A DNA stretch of 64,000 nucleotides, from positions 124,001-188,000 of IMG/VR virus record IMGVR_UViG_3300042868_007959. One strand, 5' to 3'. Each line of letters opens with the position of its first letter. Within the stretch, counting starts at the first letter, position 1. The translations under genes and the position numbers were made by a program. Below the pieces are notes generated by a model. The model worked only from the letters and a program-made list of their open reading frames with translations, made no database searches and was not told the origin of the DNA. This document shows positions 10,595-37,302 of this stretch, piece after piece.

Positions 10595-10600
10595 TTAATA

Positions 10601-10608: not shown

Positions 10609-10637
10609 GTAAAATTCTAAAGAAAAAAAAATATATT

Positions 10638-10668
10638 AAAAAAAAATATCGCCTAAAAAGACGATATC
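10638..10668 (-). terminator. Intrinsic terminator after ruvC-like gene
   Basis: ATATCGTCT-TTTT-AGGCGATAT plus T tract. Confidence 0.75.
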
Positions 10669-10694
10669 ACTAATTATCGGTATTTAAAACGATA

Positions 10695-11347: not shown

Positions 11348-12643
11348 TTATATTATAATTTGTACATCGAAAACTACAAAATCATTTTTCTTTTTAACTA
11401 TGTGTCTATCTGTTTTACCCATTGCCAAAACATTTCCAGCTATATCTGTTATCGCCACTTCACTTATTCTAACATCATCATACACTGTTAATGTTTCATT
11501 TTGTGAGTTGTAAAATTCACCTCTTGCTGCGATACAAACAATATTCTGTACTAAATCCTTTTGTATACTATCGATTACTGTATTATATGTGCTAGCACTA
11601 TAATAGTAAAGTCCTAAACCATTATTTATTATATCTGTATCCGTATCACCAATAAAATTAGTTGCAATATTATCAACTATTGTTGGGTTTGTTATTGCAA
11701 AAATACCTTTATCTAAATAAATGACTCCTGCTATTTCATCTGCATTAATGCCTGTTGATGATACTGTTTGGACATTTATTAATTCCTTACCGTTTAAACT
11801 ATATGGTTTAAATGTATCATAACCAGTTGACCAACTTTTAGTATTATCGTTATTAGGTTTTTTAATTTTATCTGATACTAAATATGAAACATTTATTTTT
11901 CTCCCATATATCGATTGCGGATAACTACTTTCATCTATATATTGGTTATCTAATTCAGTTTTTGGTATAGTTGTTCTAGGGAATGTACTATACAATTCAT
12001 ACGTAGTAATTCCTGTTGGTGTTCCACCAACAGTATATCCCGTATATACAGGTAAACTTATTTTTACACTTTTACCATCTATTATTTCACCGTATTGACT
12101 GTTATCAATAATACCCATTAATACTTTAGTAACCCCTAAACCACTAAAAGGTGTATCTGACCACCCACCATTTTGGGATGTGGTGCCTGTGAATATATTA
12201 ACAGTTGCGTCTTTAATTGGTAGAGATAAACTTTTAAAATAGTTTGAGTTTCCATTTGAATTATCGTTTCTATTAATTGATACATATGTTAAATTGGATC
12301 CTGTAACTATTGTTTCACCAATTTCAGAAGTTATTAAATTAACTTTAGAAGAATTAGGTTCTACAATTTTTTTTATAACTGGTGCAACTGTAACAAATAT
12401 TTTACTATATACATCAACATTCGATGATATATTATCATTTGTACTACTATTACTACCTAAATCACCACTATCAGCAGGTACCCTACCAGTAGTTAATTTA
12501 AAATTTGTATTGTAATTGGAATCAGAATCTCCCAAAATAAAGTGAGAGAAAACTGTATTTGTACCAGTTAATAATCTCTGTCTTCCAAGATTAGTTAATC
12601 TAGCCCTTATTGTTACTGTTGTTGCACTATTTATAAATCCCAT
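11348..12643 (-). CDS. Virion protein, tail-collar/fibre-attachment (P2 gpH N-terminal-like) fold with insertion
   Basis: N-terminal ARLTNLGRQRL..FILGDSD; C-terminal ISEVAITDIAGNVLAMGK. Paralog of the next gene. Confidence 0.65.
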   Translation of the reverse strand: MGFINSATTVTIRARLTNLGRQRLLTGTNTVFSHFILGDSDSNYNTNFKLTTGRVPADSGDLGSNSSTNDNISSNVDVYSKIFVTVAPVIKKIVEPNSSKVNLITSEIGETIVTGSNLTYVSINRNDNSNGNSNYFKSLSLPIKDATVNIFTGTTSQNGGWSDTPFSGLGVTKVLMGIIDNSQYGEIIDGKSVKISLPVYTGYTVGGTPTGITTYELYSTFPRTTIPKTELDNQYIDESSYPQSIYGRKINVSYLVSDKIKKPNNDNTKSWSTGYDTFKPYSLNGKELINVQTVSSTGINADEIAGVIYLDKGIFAITNPTIVDNIATNFIGDTDTDIINNGLGLYYYSASTYNTVIDSIQKDLVQNIVCIAARGEFYNSQNETLTVYDDVRISEVAITDIAGNVLAMGKTDRHIVKKKNDFVVFDVQIII

Positions 12644-12653
12644 TTTTTTTTAT

Positions 12654-14897
12654 TTAAAAATCTATTGTTAATTCTATTGAAGCCGTGGTAGAATCAGCCA
12701 ATCTTATTGGTCTCGAAAGTTTACCTACTAAAACTAAGTTTTGGTTATTGTCTAATATCCCTATTTCACTTATGTATCTATCATCACCAAATTCATAAGT
12801 AGGATTACTACTAGATGAAATAGTTGCCCCATCTACGTTTATATTAAATAAAGATTTATAAATGGTTGCACCTATATGTGTTCTAAGGTTACCATAGAAT
12901 AATCTTTCATCACCTAAAGTCATTTTATCATAGTAACTTGCATTTGGCATATCTAGTTCTACCCCTAAATTGAAGTTAGTAGATCCTGTGAATAATGAAC
13001 CTGTCATTATAAATCCAGTGATGTTAGGATTTTGATTTTCAAATAAAAGTGGATTTATTGTTTCCCCACTGTTACCTGTAATATTTGGAGATGTGAAGTC
13101 CATAACTTTCCAATTAGATGGAACTGGTCTAGACTGACTATTTAAATCTACTACTTGTGCAATAACTTTAAATGTATCCGCAAAGAAACCAAAACCATCA
13201 TATAAAACATCTTCTCTTTTTCTCATGTAAGGTAACTCACCTAAATTGTTTATTCTGAATTGTACATCTTTATCCGAACTAGTTGTATTATCTATTACAG
13301 TATATCTTTGAGATGGTAAGAATGGTGTTGTTACAGTTGTTGTACCTGTTGATCCTGTTCCTGTATTTTCTAACCAATAAGTTAAATACATTCTTTCACC
13401 AGATTTAAGGACACCCGTACAGTTACCATTAACTGGTGTGATTAATTCCGCAGCCAAATCAGGTAATGTAAAATTCCTATTTGATGCATAAGACATAGAT
13501 GCAATCAATTCCTCATTATCTATAACTACTATTTGTAATTGTGGGAATACTTTACCAACTGTTAATGGTAGTGTTGGTGATACAGACATACCACTGTACT
13601 CTATTAAATCATAATATTCAATGTCATTATTAGAAGATAATGTTTTCTTTATAGTATCTGAAGTAAATCTCATTCCTAATGTTGTCCCACTTGCAGTTCC
13701 AACATCATTTCTTCTATGCCACATCACTGGTATATCTAAATTTAATAATTTACCTGTCTCACCGTCAATATAGAATTGTTCCCCATAAAAATTGGAGATA
13801 CAACTATTTGAATAATGTATAATAGAGATTGATTTTTTATAAGGATCCATATAACTGATAGATTCGTTAACACCACATATAGATGTACCATCATTTGTAT
13901 CACATACTAAATTTTCATTATACCCTAAATATTGTTTCGTACCTGTATATTGTTCTGAACCAAACAAATTATGTTCGTGATAATTTATTGGTGAGTCTTT
14001 AAATAATCCCGCAGGATTTTCTGTCCAAACATTATTCATATTCCAAACAGGTATATTTTCTACACAAATATCACAACTACTATCAAATGACAGAGTTCCT
14101 GTATTCCAATATGCAGTTAATGAATTTAATCCATAATAATCATCAGTAGGACTATCACCACCAGGTAATGTGTAATATGTAATAATTGTACCCGAATATG
14201 CACTTAATGTAGGTAATGTTCTATCTACTCTTATTGTGGATCCACTTAAATATGTGATATTATATGTTGTATTTATTGTTGCCGCAGTCATTGTGTCACC
14301 AGTGACATTACCCAATGTTGGATTACTAAATCTAAATATTATATAATCGTTAACACTTGTTGCCGTTAGAGGTGTGTCTAAAACTAAAATTCCTTGTGTG
14401 TAAGTTGTTAAATCATACGAACCATCAAACTTACTCAAATCTATTGTTCCGCTTTCTTTTATGAATCTATTTCCTGTTTGAGCAACTAAACCACTGTCTA
14501 CTGTTGATCCAGAAAAGAATCCTCTATCCTCAGCTTCGTTGGTTACAATACCTTTTATTAATTGTATATTACTTTGTTGATTTAAAGGGAAAAGAAACTG
14601 ATTACTTTGGTTCAATAAAAAGGTAGAGAAAAATGGGTTATCGTCTTTTGGTCTCAATACCTTAGAAAATATATTTTTTTGGATATTCCCATCTGCCTCA
14701 ACAAAATAAAATTCTCCTGTTGACGCACCTATAGACGGAACAAATTCTTTCCACCCCTTAACGTAATTGTAATCCACTTCCGAATCCCCAATTACGTAAT
14801 TACTGAAAGTTAATTGTCCTTTAGCTAATTGCTCTCTACCAACATCACTTAATTTTACTCTCACTAATGTTGTACTCTGTTTATTGATATAACTCAT
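12654..14897 (-). CDS. Virion protein, paralogous tail-collar/fibre-attachment fold with large insertion
   Basis: VKLSDVGREQLA..YVIGDSE; ISEIGILDNNQNLVLVGKLSRP. Late motif at 14914-14921. Confidence 0.65.
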   Translation of the reverse strand: MSYINKQSTTLVRVKLSDVGREQLAKGQLTFSNYVIGDSEVDYNYVKGWKEFVPSIGASTGEFYFVEADGNIQKNIFSKVLRPKDDNPFFSTFLLNQSNQFLFPLNQQSNIQLIKGIVTNEAEDRGFFSGSTVDSGLVAQTGNRFIKESGTIDLSKFDGSYDLTTYTQGILVLDTPLTATSVNDYIIFRFSNPTLGNVTGDTMTAATINTTYNITYLSGSTIRVDRTLPTLSAYSGTIITYYTLPGGDSPTDDYYGLNSLTAYWNTGTLSFDSSCDICVENIPVWNMNNVWTENPAGLFKDSPINYHEHNLFGSEQYTGTKQYLGYNENLVCDTNDGTSICGVNESISYMDPYKKSISIIHYSNSCISNFYGEQFYIDGETGKLLNLDIPVMWHRRNDVGTASGTTLGMRFTSDTIKKTLSSNNDIEYYDLIEYSGMSVSPTLPLTVGKVFPQLQIVVIDNEELIASMSYASNRNFTLPDLAAELITPVNGNCTGVLKSGERMYLTYWLENTGTGSTGTTTVTTPFLPSQRYTVIDNTTSSDKDVQFRINNLGELPYMRKREDVLYDGFGFFADTFKVIAQVVDLNSQSRPVPSNWKVMDFTSPNITGNSGETINPLLFENQNPNITGFIMTGSLFTGSTNFNLGVELDMPNASYYDKMTLGDERLFYGNLRTHIGATIYKSLFNINVDGATISSSSNPTYEFGDDRYISEIGILDNNQNLVLVGKLSRPIRLADSTTASIELTIDF

Positions 14898-14936
14898 TTC
14901 CTTTTATTTTTTAATAAATATTCTAAATTTTAATTA

Positions 14937-17843
14937 TTAGTATGTATTACCAACATTTGTTAGTACTTCTATCTTATTTGTGTCACTATATTCTACCGTA
15001 TAGATGGTTTCACCTATTATTGGGGTATAAAATTTTTCATTTTTAATTCTATATATAAATTTATCACCAGCAACCGCATTTGTCAATGTTACTAACTTAC
15101 TATATGTTTTTTGTCCTACCACATATTCCACAATTTCACTATATATCACATTCTGATAGTTTATATCTGATGGACTTGTAACTTCAATAGTAAATCTACC
15201 TAAAATTTCGTTAGAAGGTTCACTATTTATTGACCAACTCAATATAGGTGTGTTAGTAGATATTCCACCATTAATCGATGCATTAGGGACATAAAACGCC
15301 TCAATAATATCACCCATTATTAAAGTTTCTTCTAATATAATCCTTCTAGCGTCTGTAGTAGATTTATAATATTCAATATCTTTAGTTAGTATTGCCCCAT
15401 TTAAAGAAAAAACTACGTCTGAAGCAGGTGAACTAACTAAATAAAATTCATATTTTCCTGTTGTCGTATTATAATATACTCTATCGGATGTTAATTGATT
15501 TCCAGTTGTCCCGCTATTAATTAAAGAATTTATAGGATAAACATCTGCGAGTAAATCATTTTTCTTACTATCAACTATAAACGCATAAGTCAATATTTGT
15601 TTATCTAATGGTGTAAATAATAATTTTATGAATTGAGTATTTGCAGTTGTTATTGCACTATACTCAATGTCTTTTGCCAAAACAGAACCATTATAACTAA
15701 CTATCGGATCAGATAATCCATTCACTATATATTCAGTTTGACCTGTTTGAGTGAATTGTGACGATACTGTTAGTGTATTTAATGGTGGTGGTGACGGTGC
15801 AACACTATTATTAAAGATAGGTTTTTCCGCTGCAAAAATATTAATAAAATACCAATCTGTTTCTGGATAATATAAACCATATAAGTTACCTCTTTTATAA
15901 GTGTCTATATTATTTTTTCTCGTCAACTGTTGTTTAGCCAATAAAGTGTTTATATCATAGTTCCAATAAGATTTTATTAAAAATTCACCTTCTCCTATAT
16001 TGAATGTCGGAATAAAAATTGTATTTCCAGTGGTACCCGTTAAATCTTCATATGCCAATGAAAAATTATATAACGCGGAGGTGTTAAATGTTACACTATT
16101 CTGATTATACTTATAAATTTCACCATAATAAGATAATTTATTTGTATCAATAACACCATTAACATCATTTACTAATAAGTCGAATTCAAAACCAGTTCTA
16201 CTTTTAGGTGTAATGTAAACACATCTATCGCAAGATAAAGATTTTGTTGTAACTACATTCGGTAACCCCCAATATGAGGATGTTCCTGTTATAGTAGTAG
16301 ATGTTAGACTTAATGCATCAATTTCAAAATTACATTGTACCCCTAACCCATTTGGTCTATGTATAATATGTAAATTAGTATTGTTAAAATCTGCAACATA
16401 AATTCGTTCATCAGGACCCATTTGCAATGCCCCTAATGTTGACCCACTTATATCTGCAACTGTTATTACATTTTCTACCATATCGGTTGCGGATGTATAT
16501 GTTAAATCAAACTGATGAACTTTTTCACCTGCACCATCCGTAACATAGAACTTTGATGAATCGGATGAAAACTCTAACCCATATGGTCCAACATTGAATG
16601 TCATTCCCGTAATTGTAATTAAATTACTCAAAGTACCCGCAGAAGATTCAAAATCTAAAATATCTATAATATCTTCATCATATAACAAAGATATTAGTTT
16701 TGTTGAGTCAGGTGATGTTTTCATATAACCTCTAGCGGTATTATGTACACTACCAATATTACTTATAATAGGTCCTGTCAATCCAGATGATGATACATTA
16801 AAACTATAATAAGTACTATCTCCACTAGTGTGGGTAATAACCCAATAACTTTCATCATTCATATTATTACACGCAGTAACCTTTTCGGTTATAGGTGAAT
16901 TAATTAACTTAATATTTTTAGTTTCTACTTCACCATCACCATTTTGTAAATCCATATTAACTACGGAATACTCAAACCCATTTGGTGATCCATTGTAGTC
17001 TGTAGTAAAAATAAAGTATTTATTTGATTCAGGTTTTGGTACAATAATTGCCGATTGTGTTGATGTTCCTGAACTTGATAATCCAGTACCGTTTACCATT
17101 ATTGTATTTCCACTAGTATAAACAGTTTCACCATTAGTATAAAATAACAACTCACCTATCTGATTAGATATTGATGATGATCCTTCTTGTGTCACCATAC
17201 CACCACTAAATATAACGGGTTTATTTCCCGTTATAATAGGATTAAAACTAATTCCTACATTTTTTCCGAATAACCAATTATAGTTAATTCTATCATAAGT
17301 ATAACCAGTATAAGTAACTGGTCCACATAAAGTATCCGCAGTTGTCGGAGGTATTTTACGAACACCTCTCATAGTTATTTGAGGGAAATCAAAACTATCA
17401 AAATCTGATCTTTCAATATGCACATATTTTGCGTCATTACTAATATCTAATTCCCAATTATAACTTTCATTTCTACTAGATAATAATTTATATTTTTTAC
17501 CTCCATCTACATAACTTATTTGATTATTTGGGAGTATCGGTTCTAATGATGAACTATCACTACTATTTCCCGATAAAGATAAAATAATAGTTTTTTCAGT
17601 TAACCTATCCCTAAATATAGATTGACCATATTTACCTGGATTAGAAATTAAAAAAATATCGTTTACCATAGTTAAATTAGTCGGTAAAAATAATGCAGAT
17701 TCCGTTTCTAAGAATGGTGACAACGATGCCGCTTGATAAGTTATATCAGTACCCACTCTAATCAATACAGGTGCCTCTATCTCGTTAATTATCTCACCCC
17801 TAGTATTTATAGGATTAATTATTTTACCACTTATTTTTGCCAT
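14937..17843 (-). CDS. Virion protein with Bacteroidota-type beta-propeller and C-terminal phage fibre/baseplate repeats
   Basis: NWLFG, GELLFYTNG, STQSAIIVP, YSVVNM, YWVITH, GYMKTSPD, YGLEFS, GALQMGPD, GLPN; repeats YNGSVLAKDIEY / LNGAILTKDIEY. Confidence 0.75.
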   Translation of the reverse strand: MAKISGKIINPINTRGEIINEIEAPVLIRVGTDITYQAASLSPFLETESALFLPTNLTMVNDIFLISNPGKYGQSIFRDRLTEKTIILSLSGNSSDSSSLEPILPNNQISYVDGGKKYKLLSSRNESYNWELDISNDAKYVHIERSDFDSFDFPQITMRGVRKIPPTTADTLCGPVTYTGYTYDRINYNWLFGKNVGISFNPIITGNKPVIFSGGMVTQEGSSSISNQIGELLFYTNGETVYTSGNTIMVNGTGLSSSGTSTQSAIIVPKPESNKYFIFTTDYNGSPNGFEYSVVNMDLQNGDGEVETKNIKLINSPITEKVTACNNMNDESYWVITHTSGDSTYYSFNVSSSGLTGPIISNIGSVHNTARGYMKTSPDSTKLISLLYDEDIIDILDFESSAGTLSNLITITGMTFNVGPYGLEFSSDSSKFYVTDGAGEKVHQFDLTYTSATDMVENVITVADISGSTLGALQMGPDERIYVADFNNTNLHIIHRPNGLGVQCNFEIDALSLTSTTITGTSSYWGLPNVVTTKSLSCDRCVYITPKSRTGFEFDLLVNDVNGVIDTNKLSYYGEIYKYNQNSVTFNTSALYNFSLAYEDLTGTTGNTIFIPTFNIGEGEFLIKSYWNYDINTLLAKQQLTRKNNIDTYKRGNLYGLYYPETDWYFINIFAAEKPIFNNSVAPSPPPLNTLTVSSQFTQTGQTEYIVNGLSDPIVSYNGSVLAKDIEYSAITTANTQFIKLLFTPLDKQILTYAFIVDSKKNDLLADVYPINSLINSGTTGNQLTSDRVYYNTTTGKYEFYLVSSPASDVVFSLNGAILTKDIEYYKSTTDARRIILEETLIMGDIIEAFYVPNASINGGISTNTPILSWSINSEPSNEILGRFTIEVTSPSDINYQNVIYSEIVEYVVGQKTYSKLVTLTNAVAGDKFIYRIKNEKFYTPIIGETIYTVEYSDTNKIEVLTNVGNTY

Positions 17844-17902
17844 TTATTTTTTGTTTTTAAAAACAATATCGTTATTAATAAATATTAGTTTTTATATTAT
17901 AA

Positions 17903-20900
17903 TCATTCACAATTGTGAATTAATTCTTGATTATAATAGAATCCTGATATCTGAATCGGTGGAAATGTTTTTATGAATTCTGGTGGATCAAAATCTGGAT
18001 CCCCTATTATTGTAACATTACCCTCATATTCATTAGTATCATATATTTGAGTTATAAATACTGTATTATAATCACTTATTAACGTATTTGTTTTTCTAAC
18101 ACATTTATCATACTTATTTCTAAGTCCAGCAATATAGTTTCGTTGTCTTTCATATGATGTTGTACCAGGTATGAAATTAGATAAATTATTTTGTGCAGTT
18201 ATTAATGATTGTGTTATACCACTACAACTCATAAAATTATTATAGAAATTATTTTGTTGGTTTATATATTCTATCTCTAATTGTGATAATTGTTCAAATA
18301 GAGTACTAAGTTGTGTATTTAACTGTGTTAATGAGTCATTCAATTCCGTTATAGTTTGAGTTACCTCTAAAATACTTTGAGTTAAATTCGGAGTAGTAGT
18401 ATCTTGTAAATTTAAAGAACATAGTCTACCATTATACAATACTATTTGTTGATTTACTATTGCAATTTCAATCTCTTTATTTCTTATATCATTTTTAATT
18501 GATTTTATTTCTTCATTCGTTGGGTATATTGGTTTTTGTTCTACCAAAGAATGTATAGATTCTTGACCCACAATAAAATTAGTCTGTGCACTTAATGGAC
18601 AATCTAATTCCGTATCAATAAAATTTAAACTATATTTTTTATATTTAAATTTATTTTGATCAAATATTGTATTCCTATAAATTTTTCCTGAATTATCACA
18701 ACCTTCCCATATTGTAGTTGCAGGAACTACTTGTTCTAATAAATCCAACCAATAATCACCAACTTTATCCATAAAATCAAACATAGTATCATATGTGAAT
18801 TTACCAGATAAATCTTTACCACAATTACTAGCTCTTAAGTATAATTCATAAAATAATCTAAGTAATGGATAATCACTTATTGTTTGTCTACTTTTGGCAT
18901 CAATTAAGTTACTTAATACCATTTGATCAAATACATCCTTAACCATAATAGTAGATGGATCATAATCTAAAAAGTCTAAAGGGTTAATACAAACTGAATA
19001 TGTATTATTAGTAGTAACTCCCGAAACACATTCTTTCATTTTACCACAATACTCACAATCTCCTTTACAATTTGCACATTCATCAATATCCCTCCAATAA
19101 CATACTTCATTAAGTTCATTCCAACGATAGTTTTTACCTAAACCTAATCCATCTACACCATTATCATTTAATAATTTATTAATAGATAAACAACATTCTT
19201 TTGTGATTTCACTACTTTGATTAAATGTTTGTGCAGTTATCCCCGCACCAATTTGTTGTTCAACACCACCATTATAAAGTGGTGTACCTGAATAAACGTA
19301 TATCTCAAATAAATTAATTGTCCCATCACTATCTTCAACAATAAGACTGAATAAATTATCTAAATTTTTATTATTGTTTAGAACTAAGATGTCGCTATCA
19401 CAACTAGTCCCATCAATATAGAATTTAGAAAGTGATTCACCTTTATTTAGTAAATCATAATAGTTTGAATTTAATGATTCAGAATAATTCGCAGTTAAAG
19501 TGTAATATTCATTTTTAAGTTCTATTACTTGATTTTGTAATATATTAGTGAATGTTTCACAACTAAATGGAATGACACTAGATGTGGATGCACCTAAATC
19601 AATAGTATAATTCGTAAGTGTATTATTAATATTTAATACCCCATTAAAATTAATGTATGTTGCTATTTGATCCTGAAAAATATATTCTTCACTACCCATA
19701 AACAAATAATCTTCGTCAGATTGGAAAATATAGTTATCTGTATTACAATCGGTTGGACAATTATCACAATCTATTCTTTTCCAAAAATTAAATACATCAC
19801 ACTCTATAGATTTTGCAGGATCAATACTAAATGATGTGTTTTTAACGTTTAAAATTAAATCAGAATGGTAGACATCATAATTAGTATATCTATATTCTAA
19901 ATCAAGCCATAATCTTTCCTCTGGATTGGTAATTCTTACTATTTCATAGTTATTAGTTGATCCTGTATTACATTCACCATTAGGGTAGATAGTTTCTTTT
20001 ACTACACCACCGTCATAATATACCCAAGATTTTTTATTATCGATAACACAATTTAATTGTGGTATTAAACAATCATTAATAGATAGTATCCTATTTGTTT
20101 TACAATCAGAAACATTTACCATTATATTATCTACCAATAGACAAAGATTACATTCGTAATTCTGAATCTCTATACTAAAGAAAAAGTCCTTATTAGGGTA
20201 TAATCTTCTTAAATCATCGCAAACACATTCAGGTATTGTGAAATTAAATGTTTTCCAATCTGGTTCAAATAAATCCGAATTATAACTTATTCCTTGAGAA
20301 GACAGTTGGTTGAATATTGACTCCTCAATTTGAGCCATCAATTGTTCATCACCTTCTATAAAAATTCCACTGTATCCTTCATTAGGATTAAATTCCCATA
20401 TTGGGTTTACTGACTGCGTATACGGTAAATAAGTTAATGAAGTATCAATATTATTCTGAACGTCAATATTATTATTATCTACAAACAATTTAAAATTAAT
20501 TTTTAAGTCGTCTATGTAATTTAAATAATTATTATTGTTTGATTCTTCGTATACATTATATTTTTTTATTAATGACTCATACCATTTATTATAACAAATA
20601 TAAGTTTGTTCTTCTACATATAATAACGAATTTTGTATACTATCTAATAATTGGTTTAGTTCTTTTATTTTACCACTTCTATTTAATTCAATAATGAAAG
20701 GACAACATTGTACATCATATGTAGTTGTTGTGGAAGATTCACTACCAATAACTCTAGGATTAAGAATACATTCTTTATTTACATAACTTACATCTAAATT
20801 TAATGTGGCTTTATTACAACAATTCTGTGGGATATTTTTCCCATTTGTTAATACCACATAATTAGGTGTAATCGTTAAACTATTACTAGTTATTCCCAAA

Positions 20901-23900
20901 CATTCTTTACTATTTACTGATATTGCATCTGTAGGTAATTTTGGGTTGGTTATTGCATCCGCAGACTGCAGATTATCTGCAGGTAATTTAGGCAAATCCA
21001 ATATAACATTGGTAGATATACCAACAACTGGTTTCGACATTAATGGGCTTAACTCAACAGTTCTAAATGCATTTTGTTTAAATTCTGTACCTACTTTTAC
21101 AAAAGTTTGGTTTTTAAGATTTTGAGTAAATAAATCAGTTTTTTGTTCTCTTTCAGTTATTAATCCCGATATTTGAGACTGGTTCTTAGTTAATTCAACA
21201 TTTAATTTAACTTTTTGTGAATCAGTTAACTGTAAGTTACCACTATTATCTGTAATACTTTTAGTACTTACAGATAAAATATCTGCAGTTTTATTAATCG
21301 TATTTTGAGTATCATTCTGTAATAACTGAGATTTTTGTGCCGATTCATCATAACTTATAAAGTTATTTACATCGGTAGTTAATGTGTTAATTGTATTACT
21401 TAAATCCTGAATTTGTTTTTCTAATTCAGTTATTAATACAGTATTATTATCAAATTTTGCTTTAACTAATTGATCCGTTAATTGCGTTTTTAAAACACAA
21501 GATTCAAATAACTGAGAATAAACTATTATTTGATCCTGATTTTCTTTTGTTTTAGATGATACACAATTACTATACTCTTTAGTTTTTGTACCATCATTTA
21601 TAGAATCCCCATATATTATAGTATTACAATATGAAACATAATCAAAGTTTTTAAGTTCTTTAATAGTATTTTCATAAACACTACAATCTAAATTAGTGTT
21701 AACATTAGTTAATGCTTTTTCTATTATAACATTACTTTCTTGTTTTTCCGCAATTTCATTATTTATTTCTAATATACTATTTTTTAGTATTGTTTCATTA
21801 ATAGTGTAATTATCTAACTGAACATTTTTTTGTGTTGTTAATGAATTATATACCTTTATGTCTTCAATTATTTCTAATTGTGGTTTAGTTGCATATCTTT
21901 TAAATGTATCTGTAGGTAATTTTGGGGTTATTACATCTGCAGGTAATTTTGGGTTGGATATTACATCTGCAGGTAATTTTGGGTTGGATATTACATCTGT
22001 AGTTACGTTGACTTGTGAATTCTTCAAACAAGGTTCTAAATTACGGTTTATTAATTCAATTAACTCGCTTATTTCAGAAGATAATTGTTCATAATCACCG
22101 TATAATTTACTCCATAACCCACATTCTAGTGGAATCTGTAATGAACATACATTTTGTGTCGTAATATATTTTTCATATTTTATTTCACAAGCCCCAACAT
22201 TAAAATTAAATACGAAACAACTTGTTGGTAAATTAGAAACAATAGTTAATAATTTATTTTTAATTTCATCGTATTTTTTTATTTCTCCCAATATAGGTGT
22301 ATAATCAAAATTTAAAGATGAAAGTGTTTGACTATTTTGAGATAGAATATCATTATAAGTTTGTGTAATATTATTAACCCATGATTGGTTAGTGCCTGAC
22401 CATTGCGTAAATGATACCACATTACCATCTACTGCCCTACAACAATCTGTATTAGGTTCTAAAATATTACTATTTTGCCATATTACATACTCATCAGTTA
22501 GATTTTCAGAGTCATTGAAGTTAGATTGTAAATTTTGTGATTCTTCGTCACTATTAGTAAACGCAACAAAATTTAAACACTTTATATTATTAATTGTATT
22601 ATCATAAATAAAAGCTGGAAAACAACTTATATTGTCCGCACATTTTATAAGATTATCTGCAGTATATTTTAACATATAATCAAATGAAAAGTCTATAGTA
22701 CAACTACAATCATCTAATTGTGGTAGTTTAAATCCTTTCCATTTTTCACTAGCGAAAACAACCGCAACGCTATTAAAGTCACCACAACCAATTCTAGAAG
22801 GATCGACTGCCGCAATTATTATAGAATTAGGATTGGTACTGTATTGATTGTCCCCATTGTACGGTATTAAAATATTATTGTCATAGTCAAATGTGAATTG
22901 TCCGAATTGATACCCGTAATAATTTGCTACGTCCCCATATAAATCACTTAATAAGTCAGTACTATACCAATCTAATATAAAATTATTATTATATATTGAT
23001 GGTGTAAAACTAACTCTTCCATATTCATCAATAGACTCAACCTTCCAGTTTGATGGATTCATAAGTGATGGATCCTCTAAAATGGAGTTTGGTTGCGGAG
23101 ATAATGATGTTGATCCCTCAACTACACCTTTTACTATTCTGGACTCATTAAAACAATCCCAAAAAATTTCAGTGGAGTAATACTCATATATAGAACCTAT
23201 AGGATTTTGTAAATCATAGTAACTATTATTAACTGAAAAATCTATAATCGGTAATGTGTAATTTGCATCTGGTGTAGTTAATTCAGTAGCACTATTCTCA
23301 TTATTTTTTTTACATACAATAAATTTATTACCATTTTGTTCCAATATTTGGTAATCGTAACCATACCAAGCACAACATTCAGGACTACTGATTATAGATG
23401 TTTTTTTACAATTAACCTCAGTAAAAAATTTATTACATGATATTATAGGTGAGTCCTTTTTAAAAGTATCAGATAATCTTTTTTTACCACAATAGTTATT
23501 GATAAAAGTTTTTGGTTCCCCATATTTAATAATGAAATCTGATAAAGAAATTTGTGTATTACTATATTGGTAACATTTACCCCCTATCTGATAAGTACCC
23601 AATTGAGGTGTCGTATTATTAGTCATAGTAAACTCTATCACACCATTAGGTAATGTTCCTGAAGGTGTACCGACACAAGGTGCCAATTTAGAACAATATT
23701 CCGTTTGTCTACCGTATTCATTTACATATGAAATATAATTAGCGTCTTGTGTTTTACAACAAGCTGGGAATTCATCAAAAGAAACTTTAATACCATCACT
23801 ATTAGTATAATAGATAAATGGACTACAATCTTCTAAATTTAAATTATCACAACTATATTCTACTACATTTTTTGGTTTTTCTGATAAACATATTTCTAAT

Positions 23901-26173
23901 GTTTTGTTAATATCACAATTTTCTGTAGATATTTCATTTAAACAATTTTTTAAAGATAATTCATAATTATTTTTTATTGTTTGCCACTCAGGAGAATAAA
24001 TTAAATAACCGTCTTTTTCAATTAACAATAAGTATTGGTTATAATTCGCTTCTGCTTCATTAAATGCTTGTTGTAATGTAGTCTTACCATCATTCTGTAA
24101 TGGTGTCTCAATAATACTATAATCGACATCTATACAATCCTCTATCGGTTGATACCCATTTGTTGTAGGGTTAAACGTTAACTGAGTAGTAAATATATCT
24201 GAATTATTACTAATTCCATTAAAAATACCATAATTATAATTTATAAAATAATTTTCTACTATAGTTGTAGCAGTTAGTGTTACAGTTGGTTGGTTATCAA
24301 AATTAGGTATATAACACCTACTAAAATATTGTAAGTATTCGTTACCACCATCGTATTTACCAACGTGAGGGTTATTACCCCTTAAAACTGAAACTACATT
24401 TGATCCGTAAGTTTCTCTATACCATCCGCCCGCTTTTTGAAAGTACATTTCTGTAAAATCATTTTCTACTAATTCTCCTGTTTGAGGATCAATAAAATTG
24501 GTAATTACGACATCACCATTTACAGGTGGTAATGGGAATCCTTCATCGTCATATGGTATACCTTCTAAATTAACTTCACCAGTATAAAGGTATAAAAGTT
24601 TTTTTATCTCCTCTATATCCAAAGGCTTATCAAGTATTACTATATATTCATTAAAATTAACTAATGATTCTGGTGCCCCTATAAATCTAAATAAAAATTC
24701 TACCGCTTTTCTTGTACCCTTACTTTTCCAAAGCCAAGCTATGTTTAAAATTAATCTTCTATATAATTCAATATCTATTTCTGATTGAGTTAGGTTTGTT
24801 GATGTCCCACTAAATGAACCCGAACCATTACTAGGTAAAAATAATTTACTAAAAGATGCGTCATCTATAAAATTAATTGGTTCTATACCTAACATATATG
24901 CCAAATCTTTAACTAAAGTATCAGGTACATTGTTTTTCTTATCGTAAGTTACTACATGAGCAAATTTGATTGCATTAATATATTTTTTAACATAATCGAA
25001 TTCCACCCCATAAATTCTAAGTAATTTAGTTGCTTTTTCACCATTTAATACTATATCTGCTCCATCTGCTCTAGGTATCGTATCAAAACTAGATATTGCT
25101 TCAGTCGTATACTTTCTTACAATGGTATCAGTTTTTGTCCCATCTAAACCTTCACCTAATTTATTTAATTCATCAATATAAGCAATATAAAAACTATCAA
25201 AAAAGTTTAAATTATAACCATCCTCTAAGATTGGAAATGTTAAAACTGATTTAGATGTTAATAAAACCCCATCATCAGTATAATTTGTACTTATAATTTC
25301 CGATTTATATTTAGGGTATAAGTTTTTATTTAAAATATTACTTTGAAAATCATTTAAACTAGTAAAGAACTTTTGATTCTCACTTTCATTTGGTTTAATG
25401 AAATACGGTATGGATGCAGTAACATTATTAAATAAAAAAGAAAGTTGTGGTATAAAAATACCAGTCAACTCAGGAAATGGATTACCTTCCACTATCAATT
25501 CTAAAACTGAATTTGTTTTTTGTGGAGATGGTGTAATACTTTTAATTTTTTTAATAATACCATTATGTTCTATTACATATGAACCATAGTTTACAGTAAA
25601 ATTTCTTAATGGATTAGTTATATCTGTATCCGAAATATATTGAGCATCTAAAGTATACTTTATTGCGTATGGGTTAACAAAGAAATTACTATTAACTGAA
25701 AAAGTGGATTCATCTGCTTCTATATCGTAAACATAATCAGTGATGTTATTTCCCGTAACACTACCTACTTTAGTATCAACATATATCGCAGCTGGCCATT
25801 TCTCTTGAATATCCAATAAAGAAGCTCTTATCAATTCTTTTGCGGATCCATACCAAACATAACTTAATGGATTTGATAAATCTAAATTTAATTTAGTTTT
25901 AACATTTTTTTGTATATCTAACTGTGTCGTTCCTGATGCGGCAATATCATCTAAAGTATAAAATCTAGATTTAGTACCTTGTTTAAATAAAACATCTGGT
26001 TTTGGATCTAAATTTACTGATATAGAGAAATTACCATTTGTGAATAGCGTAGTTCCTCCATCACTAGTAAGTTGAAACCCTACTAAATCAGGACTAAAAT
26101 CCCTATATTCAATGTTATCATTGAAAAATATTCTTTGGGCATATCCTGCGACTTTTATTTTTTTATTTGCCAT
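17903..26173 (-). CDS. Giant (2756 aa) baseplate-associated virion protein with gpI/gp7-like motif, Cys-rich modules and coiled coils
   Basis: LYRRLILNIAWLWKSKGTRKAVEFLFRFIG, repeated CC modules, long N/Q/K-rich heptad regions. Confidence 0.7.
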   Translation of the reverse strand: MANKKIKVAGYAQRIFFNDNIEYRDFSPDLVGFQLTSDGGTTLFTNGNFSISVNLDPKPDVLFKQGTKSRFYTLDDIAASGTTQLDIQKNVKTKLNLDLSNPLSYVWYGSAKELIRASLLDIQEKWPAAIYVDTKVGSVTGNNITDYVYDIEADESTFSVNSNFFVNPYAIKYTLDAQYISDTDITNPLRNFTVNYGSYVIEHNGIIKKIKSITPSPQKTNSVLELIVEGNPFPELTGIFIPQLSFLFNNVTASIPYFIKPNESENQKFFTSLNDFQSNILNKNLYPKYKSEIISTNYTDDGVLLTSKSVLTFPILEDGYNLNFFDSFYIAYIDELNKLGEGLDGTKTDTIVRKYTTEAISSFDTIPRADGADIVLNGEKATKLLRIYGVEFDYVKKYINAIKFAHVVTYDKKNNVPDTLVKDLAYMLGIEPINFIDDASFSKLFLPSNGSGSFSGTSTNLTQSEIDIELYRRLILNIAWLWKSKGTRKAVEFLFRFIGAPESLVNFNEYIVILDKPLDIEEIKKLLYLYTGEVNLEGIPYDDEGFPLPPVNGDVVITNFIDPQTGELVENDFTEMYFQKAGGWYRETYGSNVVSVLRGNNPHVGKYDGGNEYLQYFSRCYIPNFDNQPTVTLTATTIVENYFINYNYGIFNGISNNSDIFTTQLTFNPTTNGYQPIEDCIDVDYSIIETPLQNDGKTTLQQAFNEAEANYNQYLLLIEKDGYLIYSPEWQTIKNNYELSLKNCLNEISTENCDINKTLEICLSEKPKNVVEYSCDNLNLEDCSPFIYYTNSDGIKVSFDEFPACCKTQDANYISYVNEYGRQTEYCSKLAPCVGTPSGTLPNGVIEFTMTNNTTPQLGTYQIGGKCYQYSNTQISLSDFIIKYGEPKTFINNYCGKKRLSDTFKKDSPIISCNKFFTEVNCKKTSIISSPECCAWYGYDYQILEQNGNKFIVCKKNNENSATELTTPDANYTLPIIDFSVNNSYYDLQNPIGSIYEYYSTEIFWDCFNESRIVKGVVEGSTSLSPQPNSILEDPSLMNPSNWKVESIDEYGRVSFTPSIYNNNFILDWYSTDLLSDLYGDVANYYGYQFGQFTFDYDNNILIPYNGDNQYSTNPNSIIIAAVDPSRIGCGDFNSVAVVFASEKWKGFKLPQLDDCSCTIDFSFDYMLKYTADNLIKCADNISCFPAFIYDNTINNIKCLNFVAFTNSDEESQNLQSNFNDSENLTDEYVIWQNSNILEPNTDCCRAVDGNVVSFTQWSGTNQSWVNNITQTYNDILSQNSQTLSSLNFDYTPILGEIKKYDEIKNKLLTIVSNLPTSCFVFNFNVGACEIKYEKYITTQNVCSLQIPLECGLWSKLYGDYEQLSSEISELIELINRNLEPCLKNSQVNVTTDVISNPKLPADVISNPKLPADVITPKLPTDTFKRYATKPQLEIIEDIKVYNSLTTQKNVQLDNYTINETILKNSILEINNEIAEKQESNVIIEKALTNVNTNLDCSVYENTIKELKNFDYVSYCNTIIYGDSINDGTKTKEYSNCVSSKTKENQDQIIVYSQLFESCVLKTQLTDQLVKAKFDNNTVLITELEKQIQDLSNTINTLTTDVNNFISYDESAQKSQLLQNDTQNTINKTADILSVSTKSITDNSGNLQLTDSQKVKLNVELTKNQSQISGLITEREQKTDLFTQNLKNQTFVKVGTEFKQNAFRTVELSPLMSKPVVGISTNVILDLPKLPADNLQSADAITNPKLPTDAISVNSKECLGITSNSLTITPNYVVLTNGKNIPQNCCNKATLNLDVSYVNKECILNPRVIGSESSTTTTYDVQCCPFIIELNRSGKIKELNQLLDSIQNSLLYVEEQTYICYNKWYESLIKKYNVYEESNNNNYLNYIDDLKINFKLFVDNNNIDVQNNIDTSLTYLPYTQSVNPIWEFNPNEGYSGIFIEGDEQLMAQIEESIFNQLSSQGISYNSDLFEPDWKTFNFTIPECVCDDLRRLYPNKDFFFSIEIQNYECNLCLLVDNIMVNVSDCKTNRILSINDCLIPQLNCVIDNKKSWVYYDGGVVKETIYPNGECNTGSTNNYEIVRITNPEERLWLDLEYRYTNYDVYHSDLILNVKNTSFSIDPAKSIECDVFNFWKRIDCDNCPTDCNTDNYIFQSDEDYLFMGSEEYIFQDQIATYINFNGVLNINNTLTNYTIDLGASTSSVIPFSCETFTNILQNQVIELKNEYYTLTANYSESLNSNYYDLLNKGESLSKFYIDGTSCDSDILVLNNNKNLDNLFSLIVEDSDGTINLFEIYVYSGTPLYNGGVEQQIGAGITAQTFNQSSEITKECCLSINKLLNDNGVDGLGLGKNYRWNELNEVCYWRDIDECANCKGDCEYCGKMKECVSGVTTNNTYSVCINPLDFLDYDPSTIMVKDVFDQMVLSNLIDAKSRQTISDYPLLRLFYELYLRASNCGKDLSGKFTYDTMFDFMDKVGDYWLDLLEQVVPATTIWEGCDNSGKIYRNTIFDQNKFKYKKYSLNFIDTELDCPLSAQTNFIVGQESIHSLVEQKPIYPTNEEIKSIKNDIRNKEIEIAIVNQQIVLYNGRLCSLNLQDTTTPNLTQSILEVTQTITELNDSLTQLNTQLSTLFEQLSQLEIEYINQQNNFYNNFMSCSGITQSLITAQNNLSNFIPGTTSYERQRNYIAGLRNKYDKCVRKTNTLISDYNTVFITQIYDTNEYEGNVTIIGDPDFDPPEFIKTFPPIQISGFYYNQELIHNCE
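20921..21000 (-). repeat. Second cluster of PKLP[AT]D-coding repeats
   Basis: 20927-20949 matches 21935-21957 at 22 of 23 nt. Encodes LPKLPAD...NPKLPTD. Confidence 0.8.
21908..21999 (-). repeat. Coding tandem repeat, 30-nt unit (DVISNPKLPA)
   Basis: ttacatctgcaggtaattttgggttggata at 21931-21960 and 21961-21990, plus partial flanking copies. Confidence 0.92.
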
Positions 26174-26181: not shown

Positions 26182-27084
26182 TTAAAAATTAGTTATGTCA
26201 TCAAAATCTTTTGTTGGATCAATAGTAAATTTCTGTTCTCTAACTTCGAACAATGGTTTACCGCTAAATTGATCTTTAACTTCATATAAATTGTATTGTC
26301 TATAAATTTCATTACCGAAATTGTATATAGTATAAATACCATCTTCTAGAGATTTTGTTTGATTGGAGAACAGTGCGTATGCTAAAGTTTCTTCATCAAA
26401 CTCTACCATTTCTATTTCCATCATAACTGGATTAAAAAACGTATTAGTAATGATAACCTCTTGTTGTGGGTTACCTATGAATGGTGTTGCATTTGGTTTA
26501 AATGATGGTGCAGATGCGGGAGTTACTGTACAAAATACACTTGTCGAATTATCGTTGAAGGTATATGCTTGTGACGCATTACTATTACCTTGATTTTGTG
26601 TTATTGGTAAAGCCCTATTATTTGAGGTAATTATTCTAAATAAATTTTGTATTTTATCTTGTCCCGTACCTGTTTGTTCTTTAAGGTACTCTACTCTATA
26701 ACCTACAAGATTTCCATTCTCAAATCTATTTTGTAACTCTAAAGGTATCTGATTAATATCAAAAACAATACCTTTTACATCTTGATTATCTATTAAAACT
26801 GCACAATCTTGTATGGTTACTCTAATTTGTTTAGGTCTTATTATAATACTATAATACCCCTTAGTACCAAATACTGATGTAGGTAATTTTAATGTATATA
26901 ACCCACCAAATATTTCAGTTACATTATTTGGGTTAGCAGCAGGTATCAAAACTTGTGCTGGATCTAACGATATTAATTCTACCGATGTGATAGATTCTCT
27001 ACTTGGGGTATAACTGTAAAAAATTTCTACATCTTCTACTGATACGTCTGCTGGTCTTATTGTACCATAATTTCCTGTTGCCAT
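26182..27084 (-). CDS. Probable virion structural protein
   Basis: 300-aa beta-rich ORF within the structural operon. Confidence 0.6.
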   Translation of the reverse strand: MATGNYGTIRPADVSVEDVEIFYSYTPSRESITSVELISLDPAQVLIPAANPNNVTEIFGGLYTLKLPTSVFGTKGYYSIIIRPKQIRVTIQDCAVLIDNQDVKGIVFDINQIPLELQNRFENGNLVGYRVEYLKEQTGTGQDKIQNLFRIITSNNRALPITQNQGNSNASQAYTFNDNSTSVFCTVTPASAPSFKPNATPFIGNPQQEVIITNTFFNPVMMEIEMVEFDEETLAYALFSNQTKSLEDGIYTIYNFGNEIYRQYNLYEVKDQFSGKPLFEVREQKFTIDPTKDFDDITNF

Positions 27085-37300: not shown

Positions 37301-37302
37301 AT

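What the first reader, a model, noticed from the sequence alone, without database searches (positions are those of the whole stretch)
11348..26173. [ST]-[GA]-x-[ST] motif enriched in virion proteins: candidate surface-modification sequon
Seen (hand counts, approximate): about 18 matches in the 968-aa protein (SGNS, TADT, TGYT, SGNT, SGDS, TGMT, SGST, TGTT, TGNT, TGQT, SAIT, TANT, SGTT and others), about 13 in the 747-aa protein, 5 in the 431-aa protein, and more in the 2756-aa protein (SGTT, SGTS, TATT, TGST, TAQT, SGVT, SAQT, SGIT). SbcC (790 aa) has 0 and NrdJ (619 aa) has 1. A rough composition estimate predicts only about 3 for the 968-aa protein. The motifs are dispersed in non-homologous contexts, including the host-like propeller. 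Inference: a sequon for O-glycosylation or another modification that coats the virion, or a docking motif for a decoration protein.
Basis: partly seen in the sequence, partly recalled or inferred. Interest (0 to 1): 0.8.

Follow-up and report, generated by a model that had tools for sequence, protein, structure and literature searches.

The report
Ser/Thr-Gly-x-Thr motif in phage tail fibres
Two neighbouring tail-fibre proteins of an uncultured 254-kb phage carry four times more copies of a short Ser/Thr-Gly/Ala-x-Thr motif than chance predicts; it is probably a loop-building element here, though sister phages with a sugar-adding enzyme pair among their fibre genes may use it as a glycosylation site.

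Summary
Enrichment is significant only in the 968-aa (z 6.9) and 747-aa (z 5.6) proteins. It is not significant in the 2756-aa or 431-aa proteins, nor in any other structural protein of the phage, so it is not virion-wide. The signal is order-specific, acts at the protein level and survives 10-residue block shuffles. The refined motif is hydrophobic-[ST]-[GA]-x-T. In the 968-aa protein, a YVTN-like beta-propeller plus beta-sandwich domains, 15 of 18 sites are conserved in 78% or more of 120 homologues, and many lie on beta-hairpin turns. The motif marks distal tail-fibre proteins across a whole clade of AT-rich aquatic jumbo myoviruses, yet a quarter of 747-family members lack it. One syntenic sister subclade carries a two-glycosyltransferase cassette (PF11397/GT60-like plus GT2-like) among its fibre genes and has the highest motif density. 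The window's 253,879-bp contig and 80 related tail modules lack that cassette but remain enriched. My preferred reading is an intrinsic loop/turn motif in this phage. A sequon role is plausible only in the cassette-bearing subclade and is untested.

The parts
14937..17843 (-). 968-aa distal tail-module protein with 18 motif sites (4.4 expected)
   Evidence: The family has more than 759 members and a fixed length. Fifteen of 18 sites are kept in 78% or more of 120 homologues, with S/T and G/A swaps and a variable x.
16308..17186 (-). Beta-propeller region of the 968-aa protein (residues about 220-512). Sites 244, 340, 401 and 466 are 4-5-residue hairpin loops. Sites 253, 353 and 412 follow the next strand. 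A further possible blade (sites 168/179) lies upstream in a low-confidence region.
   Evidence: AF2 model, pLDDT 70-90 in this region. Strand map. Foldseek probability 1.0 to the YVTN propeller 1l0q and to lactonase-type propellers. Blade B0 against B3 gives E 0.0016 and pairs 168 with 401 and 179 with 412.
12654..14897 (-). 747-aa tailspike-like protein with 13 motif sites (3.2 expected)
   Evidence: AF2 model pLDDT 87.6, pTM 0.83. The family has 501 representatives.
14580..14897 (-). N-terminal anchor domain of the 747-aa protein (residues 1-106), free of the motif
   Evidence: Foldseek probability 0.99 to the tailspike N-terminal domains of LKA1 gp49 and phi297 gp61. There are almost no motif instances here in 100 homologues.
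12978..14537 (-). Motif-bearing loop regions of the 747-aa protein (residues 121-640)
   Evidence: The 797 instances in 100 homologues cluster at residues 121-260, 401-420, 511-520 and 601-640. 77% fall in coil, which is 64% of residues.
11348..12643 (-). 431-aa protein with 5 sites (2.2 expected, not significant). Its C-terminal 62 residues (DNA 11357-11542) are homologous to the C-terminus of the 747-aa protein.
   Evidence: hhalign E 2.4e-6.
17903..26173 (-). 2756-aa giant protein with 8 sites (4.8 expected, not enriched). Its N-terminus is conserved across the clade.
26182..27084 (-). Conserved 300-aa gene that marks the start of the variable fibre module; used as the synteny anchor
   Evidence: 48-50% identity in the GT-carrying subclade. 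At least 599 matches in IMG/VR.
9644..11327 (-). RuvC-like gene (10695-11327) and primase (9644-10594) that bound the module on the other side
   Evidence: 50-52% identity in syntenic GT-carrying loci.
35471..37686 (-). Baseplate J-like and gp25 baseplate genes upstream, showing a contractile-tail phage
   Evidence: Pfam: gp25 E 4.6e-13; Baseplate_J weak, E 0.0015.

Best explanation
The motif hydrophobic-[ST]-[GA]-x-T is a genuine short sequence element of the distal tail-fibre (receptor-binding module) proteins of a clade of AT-rich aquatic jumbo myoviruses. In this phage it most likely works as an intrinsic loop or beta-turn element. Gly or Ala supplies the tight turn. The flanking Ser/Thr close the turn at the ends of two strands, or cap surface loops.

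In the 968-aa protein the motif recurs at strand-turn-strand positions of the propeller and in the loops of the following beta-sandwich domains. In the 747-aa protein it sits in surface loops of the central domains.

The sites are probably not modified in this phage, because neither the genome nor its closest relatives carry the glycosyltransferase cassette. In a syntenic sister subclade, a GT60-like plus GT2-like cassette lies among the fibre genes. There the same exposed Thr-bearing loops may additionally serve as O-glycosylation acceptors, and their density is higher.

Shown: the enrichment, its specificity, its conservation, its loop and turn location, and the genomic distribution of the cassette. 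Inferred: the structural role, the absence of modification here, and any acceptor role in sister phages.
For: - The enrichment is real and order-specific and acts at the protein level.
- In the 968-aa protein, 6 sites lie in inter-strand loops of 6 residues or fewer and 3 at the end of the following strand. In four pairs the sites are 9-13 residues apart.
- Fifteen of 18 sites are kept in 78% or more of 120 homologues. S/T class conservation is 0.91 at motif positions against 0.73 at other S/T (p 0.0035). This is in a lineage without the GT.
- Flanks are hydrophobic: F/V/L/I at -1 and A/I/Y at +4.
- N or D does not substitute for S/T at positions 1 or 4, as expected for strand-end positions.
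- In the 747 family, instances fall in the same loop regions of the fold.
- No GT was found in the window, in the 10-kb flanks, or anywhere in the contig by the EYKYDPN pattern.
- 59 of 80 GT-negative tail modules of the clade are still motif-rich, and a Pfam batch scan of 79 of their ORFs found no GT.
- The enrichment and gene order persist at 54% identity in L268.
Against: - The fold does not require the motif. 25 of 100 members of the 747 family have 3 or fewer instances, and they sit in motif-poor modules.
- Several non-homologous proteins of one genome are rich together. This looks more like a trans-acting factor or shared selection than a fold constraint.
- Only 1 of 13 sites in the 747-aa protein is a canonical 2-residue hairpin.
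- Comparable beta-rich proteins show no enrichment: T4 fibres and baseplate and E. coli TolB and Pgl propellers.
- Blade-to-blade sequence similarity is weak; only one pair reaches E 0.0016.
- Density is higher where the GT cassette is present.
Confidence: 0.42

Rival explanations
1. The motif is an O-glycosylation sequon in this phage too. The fibre proteins would be modified in the cytoplasm by an enzyme not yet seen, either a different phage enzyme in the roughly 170 kb of the genome outside the window and its flanks, or a host enzyme.
For: Motif richness is a module-level trait across non-homologous proteins and is absent from same-fold homologues elsewhere. Position 4 prefers Thr by 3.6-4.8x, against 1.1-1.9x for Ser. 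A sister subclade has a GT60-like plus GT2-like cassette inside the syntenic fibre module. GT60 enzymes start O-GlcNAc-type glycosylation on Ser/Thr-rich domains (PMC8724618). XacN1, which has a homologue of this GT, has virion glycoproteins (PMC5852040). Sites are enriched in loops.
Against: No GT was found in the window or its flanks. The contig lacks the conserved GT peptide pattern. Eighty related tail modules lack any GT but stay enriched. The sites are positionally conserved at hairpins, as a structural role predicts. Most of the 254-kb genome was not scanned for other GT families, so this is not excluded.
Confidence: 0.2
2. The motif is a vestigial or pre-adapted sequon. It is the acceptor of the cassette in the GT-carrying subclade. 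The window's lineage either lost the cassette or never gained it, and keeps only those sites that are also structurally useful.
For: Orthologous 747-family proteins have 2.5-3.1 sites per 100 aa in GT-linked modules and 1.3-2.4 in GT-negative ones, with no overlap. GT-linked modules hold 3-7 rich proteins each. The modules are syntenic. The cassette is 72-98% conserved and occurs in several genomic contexts, so it is mobile.
Against: The density difference is confounded by phylogeny, because the GT-linked modules form one subclade. L009, L011 and L184 have equally high densities with no GT in the module, although their genome-wide status is unknown. The cassette's substrate is unknown. In 25 of 65 loci it sits among non-structural genes.
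Confidence: 0.17
3. The motif forms repeated ligand-contact or adhesive loops. Thr/Ser hydroxyls next to a flexible Gly would bind host surface glycans, and selection would come from the receptor and not from a modifying enzyme.
For: The motif is confined to receptor-binding-module proteins. It lies in loops of a propeller and of a tailspike-like protein. Neighbouring fibre genes in the clade carry adhesin repeats such as SprB and YadA_head. Density varies by lineage.
Against: No binding-site geometry could be examined. The motif sits on several different faces and domains. Strong conservation of sites in the 968 family contrasts with the usual rapid change of receptor-contact loops.
Confidence: 0.12
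4. The signal is an artefact of composition, local S/T/G-rich segments, collagen-like G-X-Y tracts or post-hoc motif choice.
For: The motif was chosen after reading the sequences. The enriched proteins are S/T-rich (about 20%). Some very rich relatives owe their counts to (GSS)n tracts.
Against: The enrichment survives 10-residue block shuffles, collapsing of overlaps and masking of (Gxx)>=4 tracts (the window counts are unchanged). Permuted patterns are mostly near expectation. An unbiased scan of all a-b-x-c patterns finds SGxT (250 vs 39) and TGxT (196 vs 45) as the only multi-copy signals. The result is replicated in hundreds of independent homologues.
Confidence: 0.03

Closest known systems
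Phage virion O-glycosylation by phage-encoded glycosyltransferases (mycobacteriophages: Freeman et al. 2023, known to me only by title via PMC10877033; XacN1 virion glycoproteins, PMC5852040)
   Same: In the sister subclade, glycosyltransferase genes lie inside the structural gene module next to Ser/Thr-rich virion proteins. XacN1 encodes a 38%-identical homologue of the same GT and has glycoproteins in its virion.
   Different: No glycan has been shown on any protein of this clade. The window's genome lacks the enzyme. The candidate targets are tail fibres and not the capsid or tail tube. A defined short motif, not a Ser/Thr-rich tail, would be the acceptor. The details of the mycobacteriophage case come from my own knowledge, because the paper was not held.
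CAZy GT60 / Pfam PF11397 polypeptide alpha-GlcNAc transferases (Dictyostelium and T. cruzi mucin-type initiation; Skp1 Gnt1)
   Same: The sister-phage enzyme scores 223 bits against a 21-bit cut-off for PF11397 and has an invariant DxH-type motif, LDSHHRF. Characterised members add GlcNAc to Ser/Thr-rich polypeptides (PMC8724618). The equivalence of PF11397 and GT60 is from my own knowledge.
   Different: This is a viral and bacterial setting. The substrate is unknown and no solved structure matches by sequence. The enzyme is paired with a GT2-like partner. In 25 of 65 loci it is not near fibre genes, and it is absent from the window.
Two-residue beta-hairpin turns with Gly (type I'/II') flanked by beta-branched or hydroxyl residues
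   Same: Sites such as 340 SGDS, 244 SGNT, 401 SAGT and 466 SGST of the 968-aa protein, and 218 SGST of the 747-aa protein, lie exactly between two strands. Gly or Ala is at loop position 1 and N/D/S/T is often at position 2. Flanks are hydrophobic. The residue preferences of these turn types are from my own knowledge.
   Different: Such turns are universal, yet T4 fibres and E. coli propellers show no enrichment. Most 747-aa sites are in longer loops. The requirement for S/T on both sides, and for T at position 4, is stricter than general turn statistics as I know them.
Blade signature motifs of beta-propellers (YVTN, NHL, SGL families)
   Same: The 968-aa protein has a YVTN/lactonase-like propeller. 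The motif recurs at a strand-turn-strand position, as blade signatures do.
   Different: No Pfam repeat family is matched above threshold (SGL E 0.011, below the cut-off). Blade-to-blade similarity is barely detectable. The same motif also fills non-propeller proteins.

Membership tests
Protein O-glycosylation sequon of a phage-encoded system | A cognate protein glycosyltransferase encoded by the same genome | tested here: not met
   No GT in the Pfam scans of all window ORFs of 100 aa or more, in the 10-kb flanks or in the six-frame HMM search. The whole contig is absent from the 98 contigs with the EYKYDPN pattern. Other GT families in the remaining ~170 kb were not examined.
Protein O-glycosylation sequon of a phage-encoded system | The motif co-occurs with the enzyme across genomes | tested here: inconclusive
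   40 of 65 GT loci have motif-rich neighbours, and density is highest there. However, 59 of 80 GT-negative modules are also rich. The comparison is confounded by phylogeny.
Protein O-glycosylation sequon of a phage-encoded system | Acceptor residues are surface-exposed | tested here: inconclusive
   77% of the 747-family instances map to coil, which is 64% of residues, and 14% to strands, which are 28%. The 968-aa sites are on turns.
Protein O-glycosylation sequon of a phage-encoded system | A covalent glycan on the motif Ser/Thr | not testable with these tools
   This needs glycoproteomics or intact-mass measurement.
PF11397 / GT60 polypeptide GlcNAc-transferase (the enzyme of sister phages, e.g. 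L010:1983-3179) | Pfam score above the curated cut-off | tested here: met
   223.2 bits against a cut-off of 21, E 8.5e-66.
PF11397 / GT60 polypeptide GlcNAc-transferase (the enzyme of sister phages, e.g. L010:1983-3179) | A GT-A metal-binding DxD/DxH motif is conserved | tested here: met
   LDSHHRF is near-invariant in 205 sequences. Reading it as the catalytic DxH is my inference.
PF11397 / GT60 polypeptide GlcNAc-transferase (the enzyme of sister phages, e.g. L010:1983-3179) | Transfers HexNAc to a polypeptide Ser/Thr | not testable with these tools
   No assay was possible. The DNA-glycosylation papers do not mention this family.
Beta-propeller (YVTN / lactonase-like) for the 968-aa protein, residues about 220-512 | Repeated four-stranded blades around an axis, with fold similarity to solved propellers | tested here: met
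   The AF2 strand pattern has pLDDT 70-90. Foldseek probability is 1.0 to 1l0q, 1ri6, 3scy and others.
Beta-propeller (YVTN / lactonase-like) for the 968-aa protein, residues about 220-512 | Sequence membership of a named repeat family | tested here: not met
   The only hit is SGL, E 0.011 and 15.8 bits against a 26.3-bit cut-off.
Host-derived ('host-like') propeller | Cellular homologues detectable by sequence | tested here: not met
   The genome-contig scan found only three phage-like contigs. The Atlas look-alikes (Bacteroidota PKD and TolB-like) score 0.64, which is a lead only.
Tailspike / receptor-binding protein (747-aa protein) | An N-terminal particle-binding domain like those of known tailspikes | tested here: inconclusive
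   Foldseek probability 0.99 but E 0.014, covering 106 residues, to LKA1 gp49 and phi297 gp61. No match for the rest, and no Pfam or PHROG family.
Collagen-like G-X-Y tail-fibre repeats | Runs of G-x-x triplets | tested here: not met
   Masking (Gxx)>=4 tracts leaves the window counts unchanged at 18 and 13. Almost no ([GA]x[ST])n runs occur in either family. Such tracts do occur in some sister-phage fibre proteins.

The most novel reading that the evidence does not exclude
A large clade of uncultured aquatic jumbo myoviruses uses hydrophobic-[ST]-[GA]-x-T as a dedicated O-glycosylation sequon on its receptor-binding fibres. A mobile GT60-like plus GT2-like cassette would install the glycan. 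This would be the first defined sequon for glycosylated phage tail fibres. Lineages like the window's would be either modified by another enzyme or caught after cassette loss.
Probability: 0.3. Interest if true: 0.8.

Novelty: new variant of a known kind. Interest (0 to 1): 0.6.

Why it matters
If the motif is only structural, it is a compact and easily recognised signature of a very abundant but unannotated family of fibre proteins. These proteins currently have no Pfam or PHROG family. The signature would help to find receptor-binding modules in metagenomic jumbo phages.

If it is an acceptor site in the cassette-bearing subclade, phage tail fibres would join capsids and tail tubes as glycosylated virion parts. 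A short defined sequon and a two-enzyme cassette could then be tested in E. coli. That bears on host recognition, on shielding from proteases or grazers, and on tools for site-specific protein glycosylation.

Either way, the data give a clean natural comparison. The fibre modules are syntenic, with and without the cassette, and they differ in motif density.

Tried and rejected
- **Composition or local S/T/G clustering:** rejected by block shuffles.
- **Any arrangement of S/T and G/A:** rejected by permuted patterns.
- **DNA k-mer artefact:** rejected, because codons at the sites are diverse.
- **Collagen-like period-3 tracts:** absent from the window proteins, although present in some relatives.
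- **Generic property of tail fibres or baseplates:** T4 gp34, gp37, gp12, gp10, gp7 and others are not enriched.
- **Generic property of beta-propellers:** E. coli Pgl has 0 and TolB has 1.
- **Shared domain between the 968-aa and 747-aa proteins:** hhalign E 0.19.
- **Strong internal repeats in the propeller:** profile self-alignment gives E 0.13. Only one blade pair reaches E 0.0016.
- **Family assignment:** Pfam, PHROGs and PDB sequence searches on the four proteins gave nothing useful. Megablast and tblastn against GenBank phages gave no hit for the 968-aa or 747-aa proteins.
- **Organism names from cluster members:** none available.
- **Walking the source contig for a GT:** only about 20 kb beyond the window was reached before the look-up cap.
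- **Finding the window contig among GT homologues by contig length:** not found among the top 120 of more than 7,000 hits, in either of two searches.
- **A second degenerate GT pattern:** The 747 alignment was too divergent for the search for related loci.
- **XacN1 as an independent replicate:** its GT neighbours are not motif-rich.
- **The GT's partner protein:** GT2 in one version (E 1.4e-10), but only a faint GalT1 match (E 0.12) in the others.
- **The mycobacteriophage glycosylation paper:** could not be read.
Full report
**Setting.** The window has 28% G+C, and almost all genes are on the minus strand. It comes from a 253,879-bp metagenomic contig (JGI 3300042868, IMGVR_UViG_3300042868_007959), where it spans record positions 124,001-188,000. 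Pfam identifies these genes:
- gp25 and Baseplate_J-like baseplate genes;
- class II RNR (NrdJ);
- DnaB-like helicase, RNase H, a RecA/UvsX-like protein and gp32;
- a sigma-70 factor, SbcCD, primase and a cREC_REC protein.

This is a T4-like-replication jumbo myovirus. The four proteins of the finding lie downstream of the baseplate genes. They are bounded by a conserved 300-aa gene on one side and by a RuvC-like gene plus primase on the other. They have no Pfam or PHROG family and no relative in 50,697 GenBank phage records.

**Observation.** Against 2,000 residue shuffles, the results are:

| Protein | Observed | Expected | Result |
|---|---|---|---|
| 968 aa | 18 | 4.4 | z 6.9 |
| 747 aa | 13 | 3.2 | z 5.6 |
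| 431 aa | 5 | 2.2 | p 0.06, not significant |
| 2756 aa | 8 | 4.8 | p 0.11, not significant |

None of the other 39 ORFs is clearly enriched. This includes the 1366, 1896, 1201, 671 and 609 aa structural proteins. The tail-tube-like protein and its neighbours just outside the window are not enriched either. The motif is therefore not a property of virion proteins in general.

In the two enriched proteins the signal passes several controls:
- It survives shuffling within blocks of only 10 residues (z 5.6 and 4.2).
- It survives collapsing overlapping sites.
- It survives masking collagen-like tracts.
- It is order-specific. In the 968-aa protein [ST]G.[ST] is 14 against 2.9, while [ST]G.[^ST] (7 vs 11.3) and [^ST]G.[ST] (8 vs 11.2) are below expectation.
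- Permuted arrangements are mostly near expectation. The exceptions are [ST][GA][ST] in the 747-aa protein (15 vs 3.2) and [ST].[ST][GA] in the 968-aa protein (11 vs 4.4).
- Codons at the sites are diverse.

An unbiased scan of all a-b-x-c patterns in the 747 family finds SGxT (250 vs 39) and TGxT (196 vs 45) as the only multi-copy signals. Position 4 is Thr-specific, at 3.6-4.8x against 1.1-1.9x for Ser. Position -1 is hydrophobic. The refined motif is hydrophobic-[ST]-[GA]-x-T.

**The two proteins.** The 968-aa protein belongs to a family of more than 759 metagenomic proteins of almost invariant length. An AF2 model (mean pLDDT 63.8; 70-90 in residues 220-510 and in most of 540-960) shows a beta-propeller followed by beta-sandwich domains. 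Foldseek matches YVTN and lactonase-type propellers with probability 1.0.

Its sites map onto the structure as follows:
- Six sites lie in inter-strand loops of 6 residues or fewer (244, 340, 401, 466, 700, 733).
- Three follow the next strand (253, 353, 412).
- Four pairs of sites are 9-13 residues apart, in a strand-motif-strand-motif layout (168/179, 244/253, 340/353, 401/412).
- Five sites are in low-confidence regions.

Blade-to-blade sequence similarity is weak. One pair reaches E 0.0016, and it aligns 168 with 401 and 179 with 412.

Across 120 homologues at 57-94% identity, the family averages 20.1 sites against 4.7 expected. Fifteen of the 18 query sites are kept in 78% or more of sequences, with S/T and G/A interchange and a variable x. 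S/T class conservation is higher at motif positions than at other S/T (0.91 vs 0.73, p 0.0035).

The 747-aa protein has a confident model (pLDDT 87.6, pTM 0.83). Its N-terminal 106 residues resemble tailspike particle-binding domains (probability 0.99), and the rest has no solved relative. Only site 218 is a canonical two-residue hairpin. The other sites lie in longer loops.

Its family (501 representatives, 26-67% identity) averages 8.0 sites against 2.5 expected. Exact columns are not conserved. Instead, instances cluster in the same loop regions and avoid the N-terminal anchor and the C-terminal sandwich. The two families are not detectably homologous. The 431-aa protein shares only the C-terminal 62 residues with the 747 family.

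**Controls.** T4 fibre, baseplate, sheath and capsid proteins are not comparably enriched. For example gp34 has 3 against 6.9, gp37 has 11 against 6.8 and gp12 has 3 against 3.6. E. coli Pgl (a top fold match, 1ri6) has 0 sites and TolB has 1. The motif is therefore not generic to fibres or propellers.

**A clade-level trait.** Neighbourhoods of 747-family members show that motif richness belongs to whole fibre modules:
- L009 has a 1609-aa protein with 34 sites (8.2 expected), a 721-aa protein with 27 (4.7) and a 369-aa protein with 8 (1.8). L011 and L184 are similar.
- 25 of 100 family representatives have 3 or fewer sites. They sit in motif-poor modules (L182, L183), so the fold does not need the motif.

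**The glycosyltransferase lead.** In L010 a 398-aa PF11397 protein (E 8.5e-66) lies among five motif-rich proteins. I fetched 65 IMG/VR loci around homologues of this GT:
- 40 loci hold motif-rich ORFs. The pooled count after masking collagen-like tracts is 2,776 against 735 expected.
- 36 of those 40 also hold a 747-family gene.
- 25 loci hold no rich ORF, and 23 of those lack the 747 family.

The rich loci are syntenic with the window. The shared order is:
1. the 300-aa gene (48-50% identity);
2. a homologue of the N-terminus of the 2756-aa protein;
3. fibre genes, then the GT and a partner of about 265 aa, then more fibre genes;
4. the 747-family gene (27-31% identity);
5. the RuvC-like gene (49-53%);
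6. the primase (47-51%).

The partner is a GT2 enzyme in one version (E 1.4e-10). In the other versions it matches GalT1 only faintly. The GT has near-invariant peptides, including a DxH-type motif. It is 72-98% conserved across contexts.

From the literature:
- GT60 enzymes start mucin-type O-glycosylation with GlcNAc on Ser/Thr-rich domains (PMC8724618).
- The jumbo phage XacN1 has a 38%-identical homologue and at least two virion glycoproteins (PMC5852040). Its GT neighbours are not motif-rich.
- Two papers on DNA glycosylation by phage GTs do not mention this family. DNA or another substrate is still not excluded, because 25 of 65 cassettes sit among non-structural genes.

**The window lacks the cassette.** The evidence for its absence is:
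- No GT or partner appears in the window, in its flanks, or in tail-module loci of the 968 lineage.
- A degenerate pattern for the 98.5%-or-more conserved peptide EYKYDPN matches 98 viral contigs. The window's contig and the five other 968-family contigs are not among them.
- I used the 300-aa gene as an anchor to fetch the 80 tail modules closest to the window. None of their contigs is in the GT list, and none has a GT HMM hit.
- A Pfam batch scan of 79 of their ORFs finds no glycosyltransferase.

Even so, 59 of these 80 modules have motif-rich ORFs (97 of 612 ORFs). The enrichment persists at 54% identity in a contig from a Prochlorococcus single-cell genome.

Orthologous 747-family proteins have 1.3-2.4 sites per 100 aa in GT-negative modules and 2.5-3.1 in GT-linked ones, with no overlap. 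The GT-linked modules form one subclade, so this difference is confounded by phylogeny.

**Interpretation.** For this phage I favour an intrinsic loop/turn role (0.42). The reasons are the hairpin location, the hydrophobic flanks, the positional conservation in a lineage without the enzyme, and the persistence of enrichment in 59 of 80 GT-negative modules.

That reading does not explain why the same fold can do without the motif, nor why unrelated proteins of one module gain it together. Those facts, the embedded cassette and the Thr preference keep the following rivals alive:
- a sequon in this phage, installed by an unseen enzyme (0.20);
- a sequon used only where the cassette is present, with the window's sites vestigial or pre-adapted (0.17);
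- a receptor-contact role (0.12).

Artefact is effectively excluded (0.03). No step that shows modification was possible with these tools.

Noticed in passing
L268 (QCKH01000004.1, Prochlorococcus sp. AG-409-L21, 83,794-bp contig): A contig in a Prochlorococcus single-cell genome carries the same fibre module: a 972-aa protein 54% identical to the 968-aa protein, then the 747 family, a 432-aa protein and a RuvC-like gene. This may be an infecting phage and is a host lead for the clade. Two other hits are short contigs binned into Flavobacteriales and Proteobacteria MAGs.
   Followed up: partly
window 11357-11542 (-) and 12657-12920 (-): The C-terminal 62 residues of the 431-aa protein are homologous to the C-terminus of the 747-aa protein (hhalign E 2.4e-6). 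This suggests a shared C-terminal module in adjacent fibre genes.
   Followed up: partly
L012-L076, e.g. L013:10001-11991 and L068:9962-11982: The GT plus partner cassette of about 265 aa is 72-98% conserved while the surrounding structural genes are 27-53% identical. It also occurs in at least two genomic contexts, the fibre module and a site near NrdJ/DnaB. It behaves like a mobile two-gene unit.
   Followed up: partly
L073:7295-9955 and L017:6492-9953: Fibre proteins next to the GT contain long collagen-like (G-S-S / G-T-S)n tracts, with up to about 60 consecutive triplets. These would themselves be Ser/Thr-rich candidate acceptor regions.
   Followed up: no
window 8962-9339 (-): A 125-aa protein gives a strong cREC_REC (cyclic-phosphate processing receiver domain) hit, E 2e-23. 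It lies next to the primase and is conserved in relatives.
   Followed up: no
window 1314-2111 (-): A phage-encoded sigma-70 family factor with regions 1.2, 2 and 4 (E 1e-17 for region 2). The exact protein is found on many contigs.
   Followed up: no
window 17903-26173 (-), residues about 2300-2400: The C-terminal part of the 2756-aa protein shows Cys-rich local contexts (such as 'dceycgkmkecv' and 'itkecc'). Only its N-terminal 100 residues or so are conserved in the sister subclade, where the homologue is 926-1120 aa.
   Followed up: no
L181 (XacN1 203-238 kb): The XacN1 homologue of the GT (ORF334) lies beside a carbamoyltransferase (ORF333) and close to a GT9 enzyme (ORF328) and a giant ORF (ORF325). 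This looks like a glycan-modification cluster.
   Followed up: partly
L183 (logan SRR27418459_46): A contig carrying a 747-family member has only 19% G+C, which is extremely AT-rich. None of its scored ORFs has a motif instance.
   Followed up: no
L010:6557-8155 and GT-negative modules: Fibre-module proteins of the clade carry SprB repeats and YadA_head repeats. These are adhesin-type domains known from Bacteroidota gliding adhesins and trimeric autotransporters.
   Followed up: no
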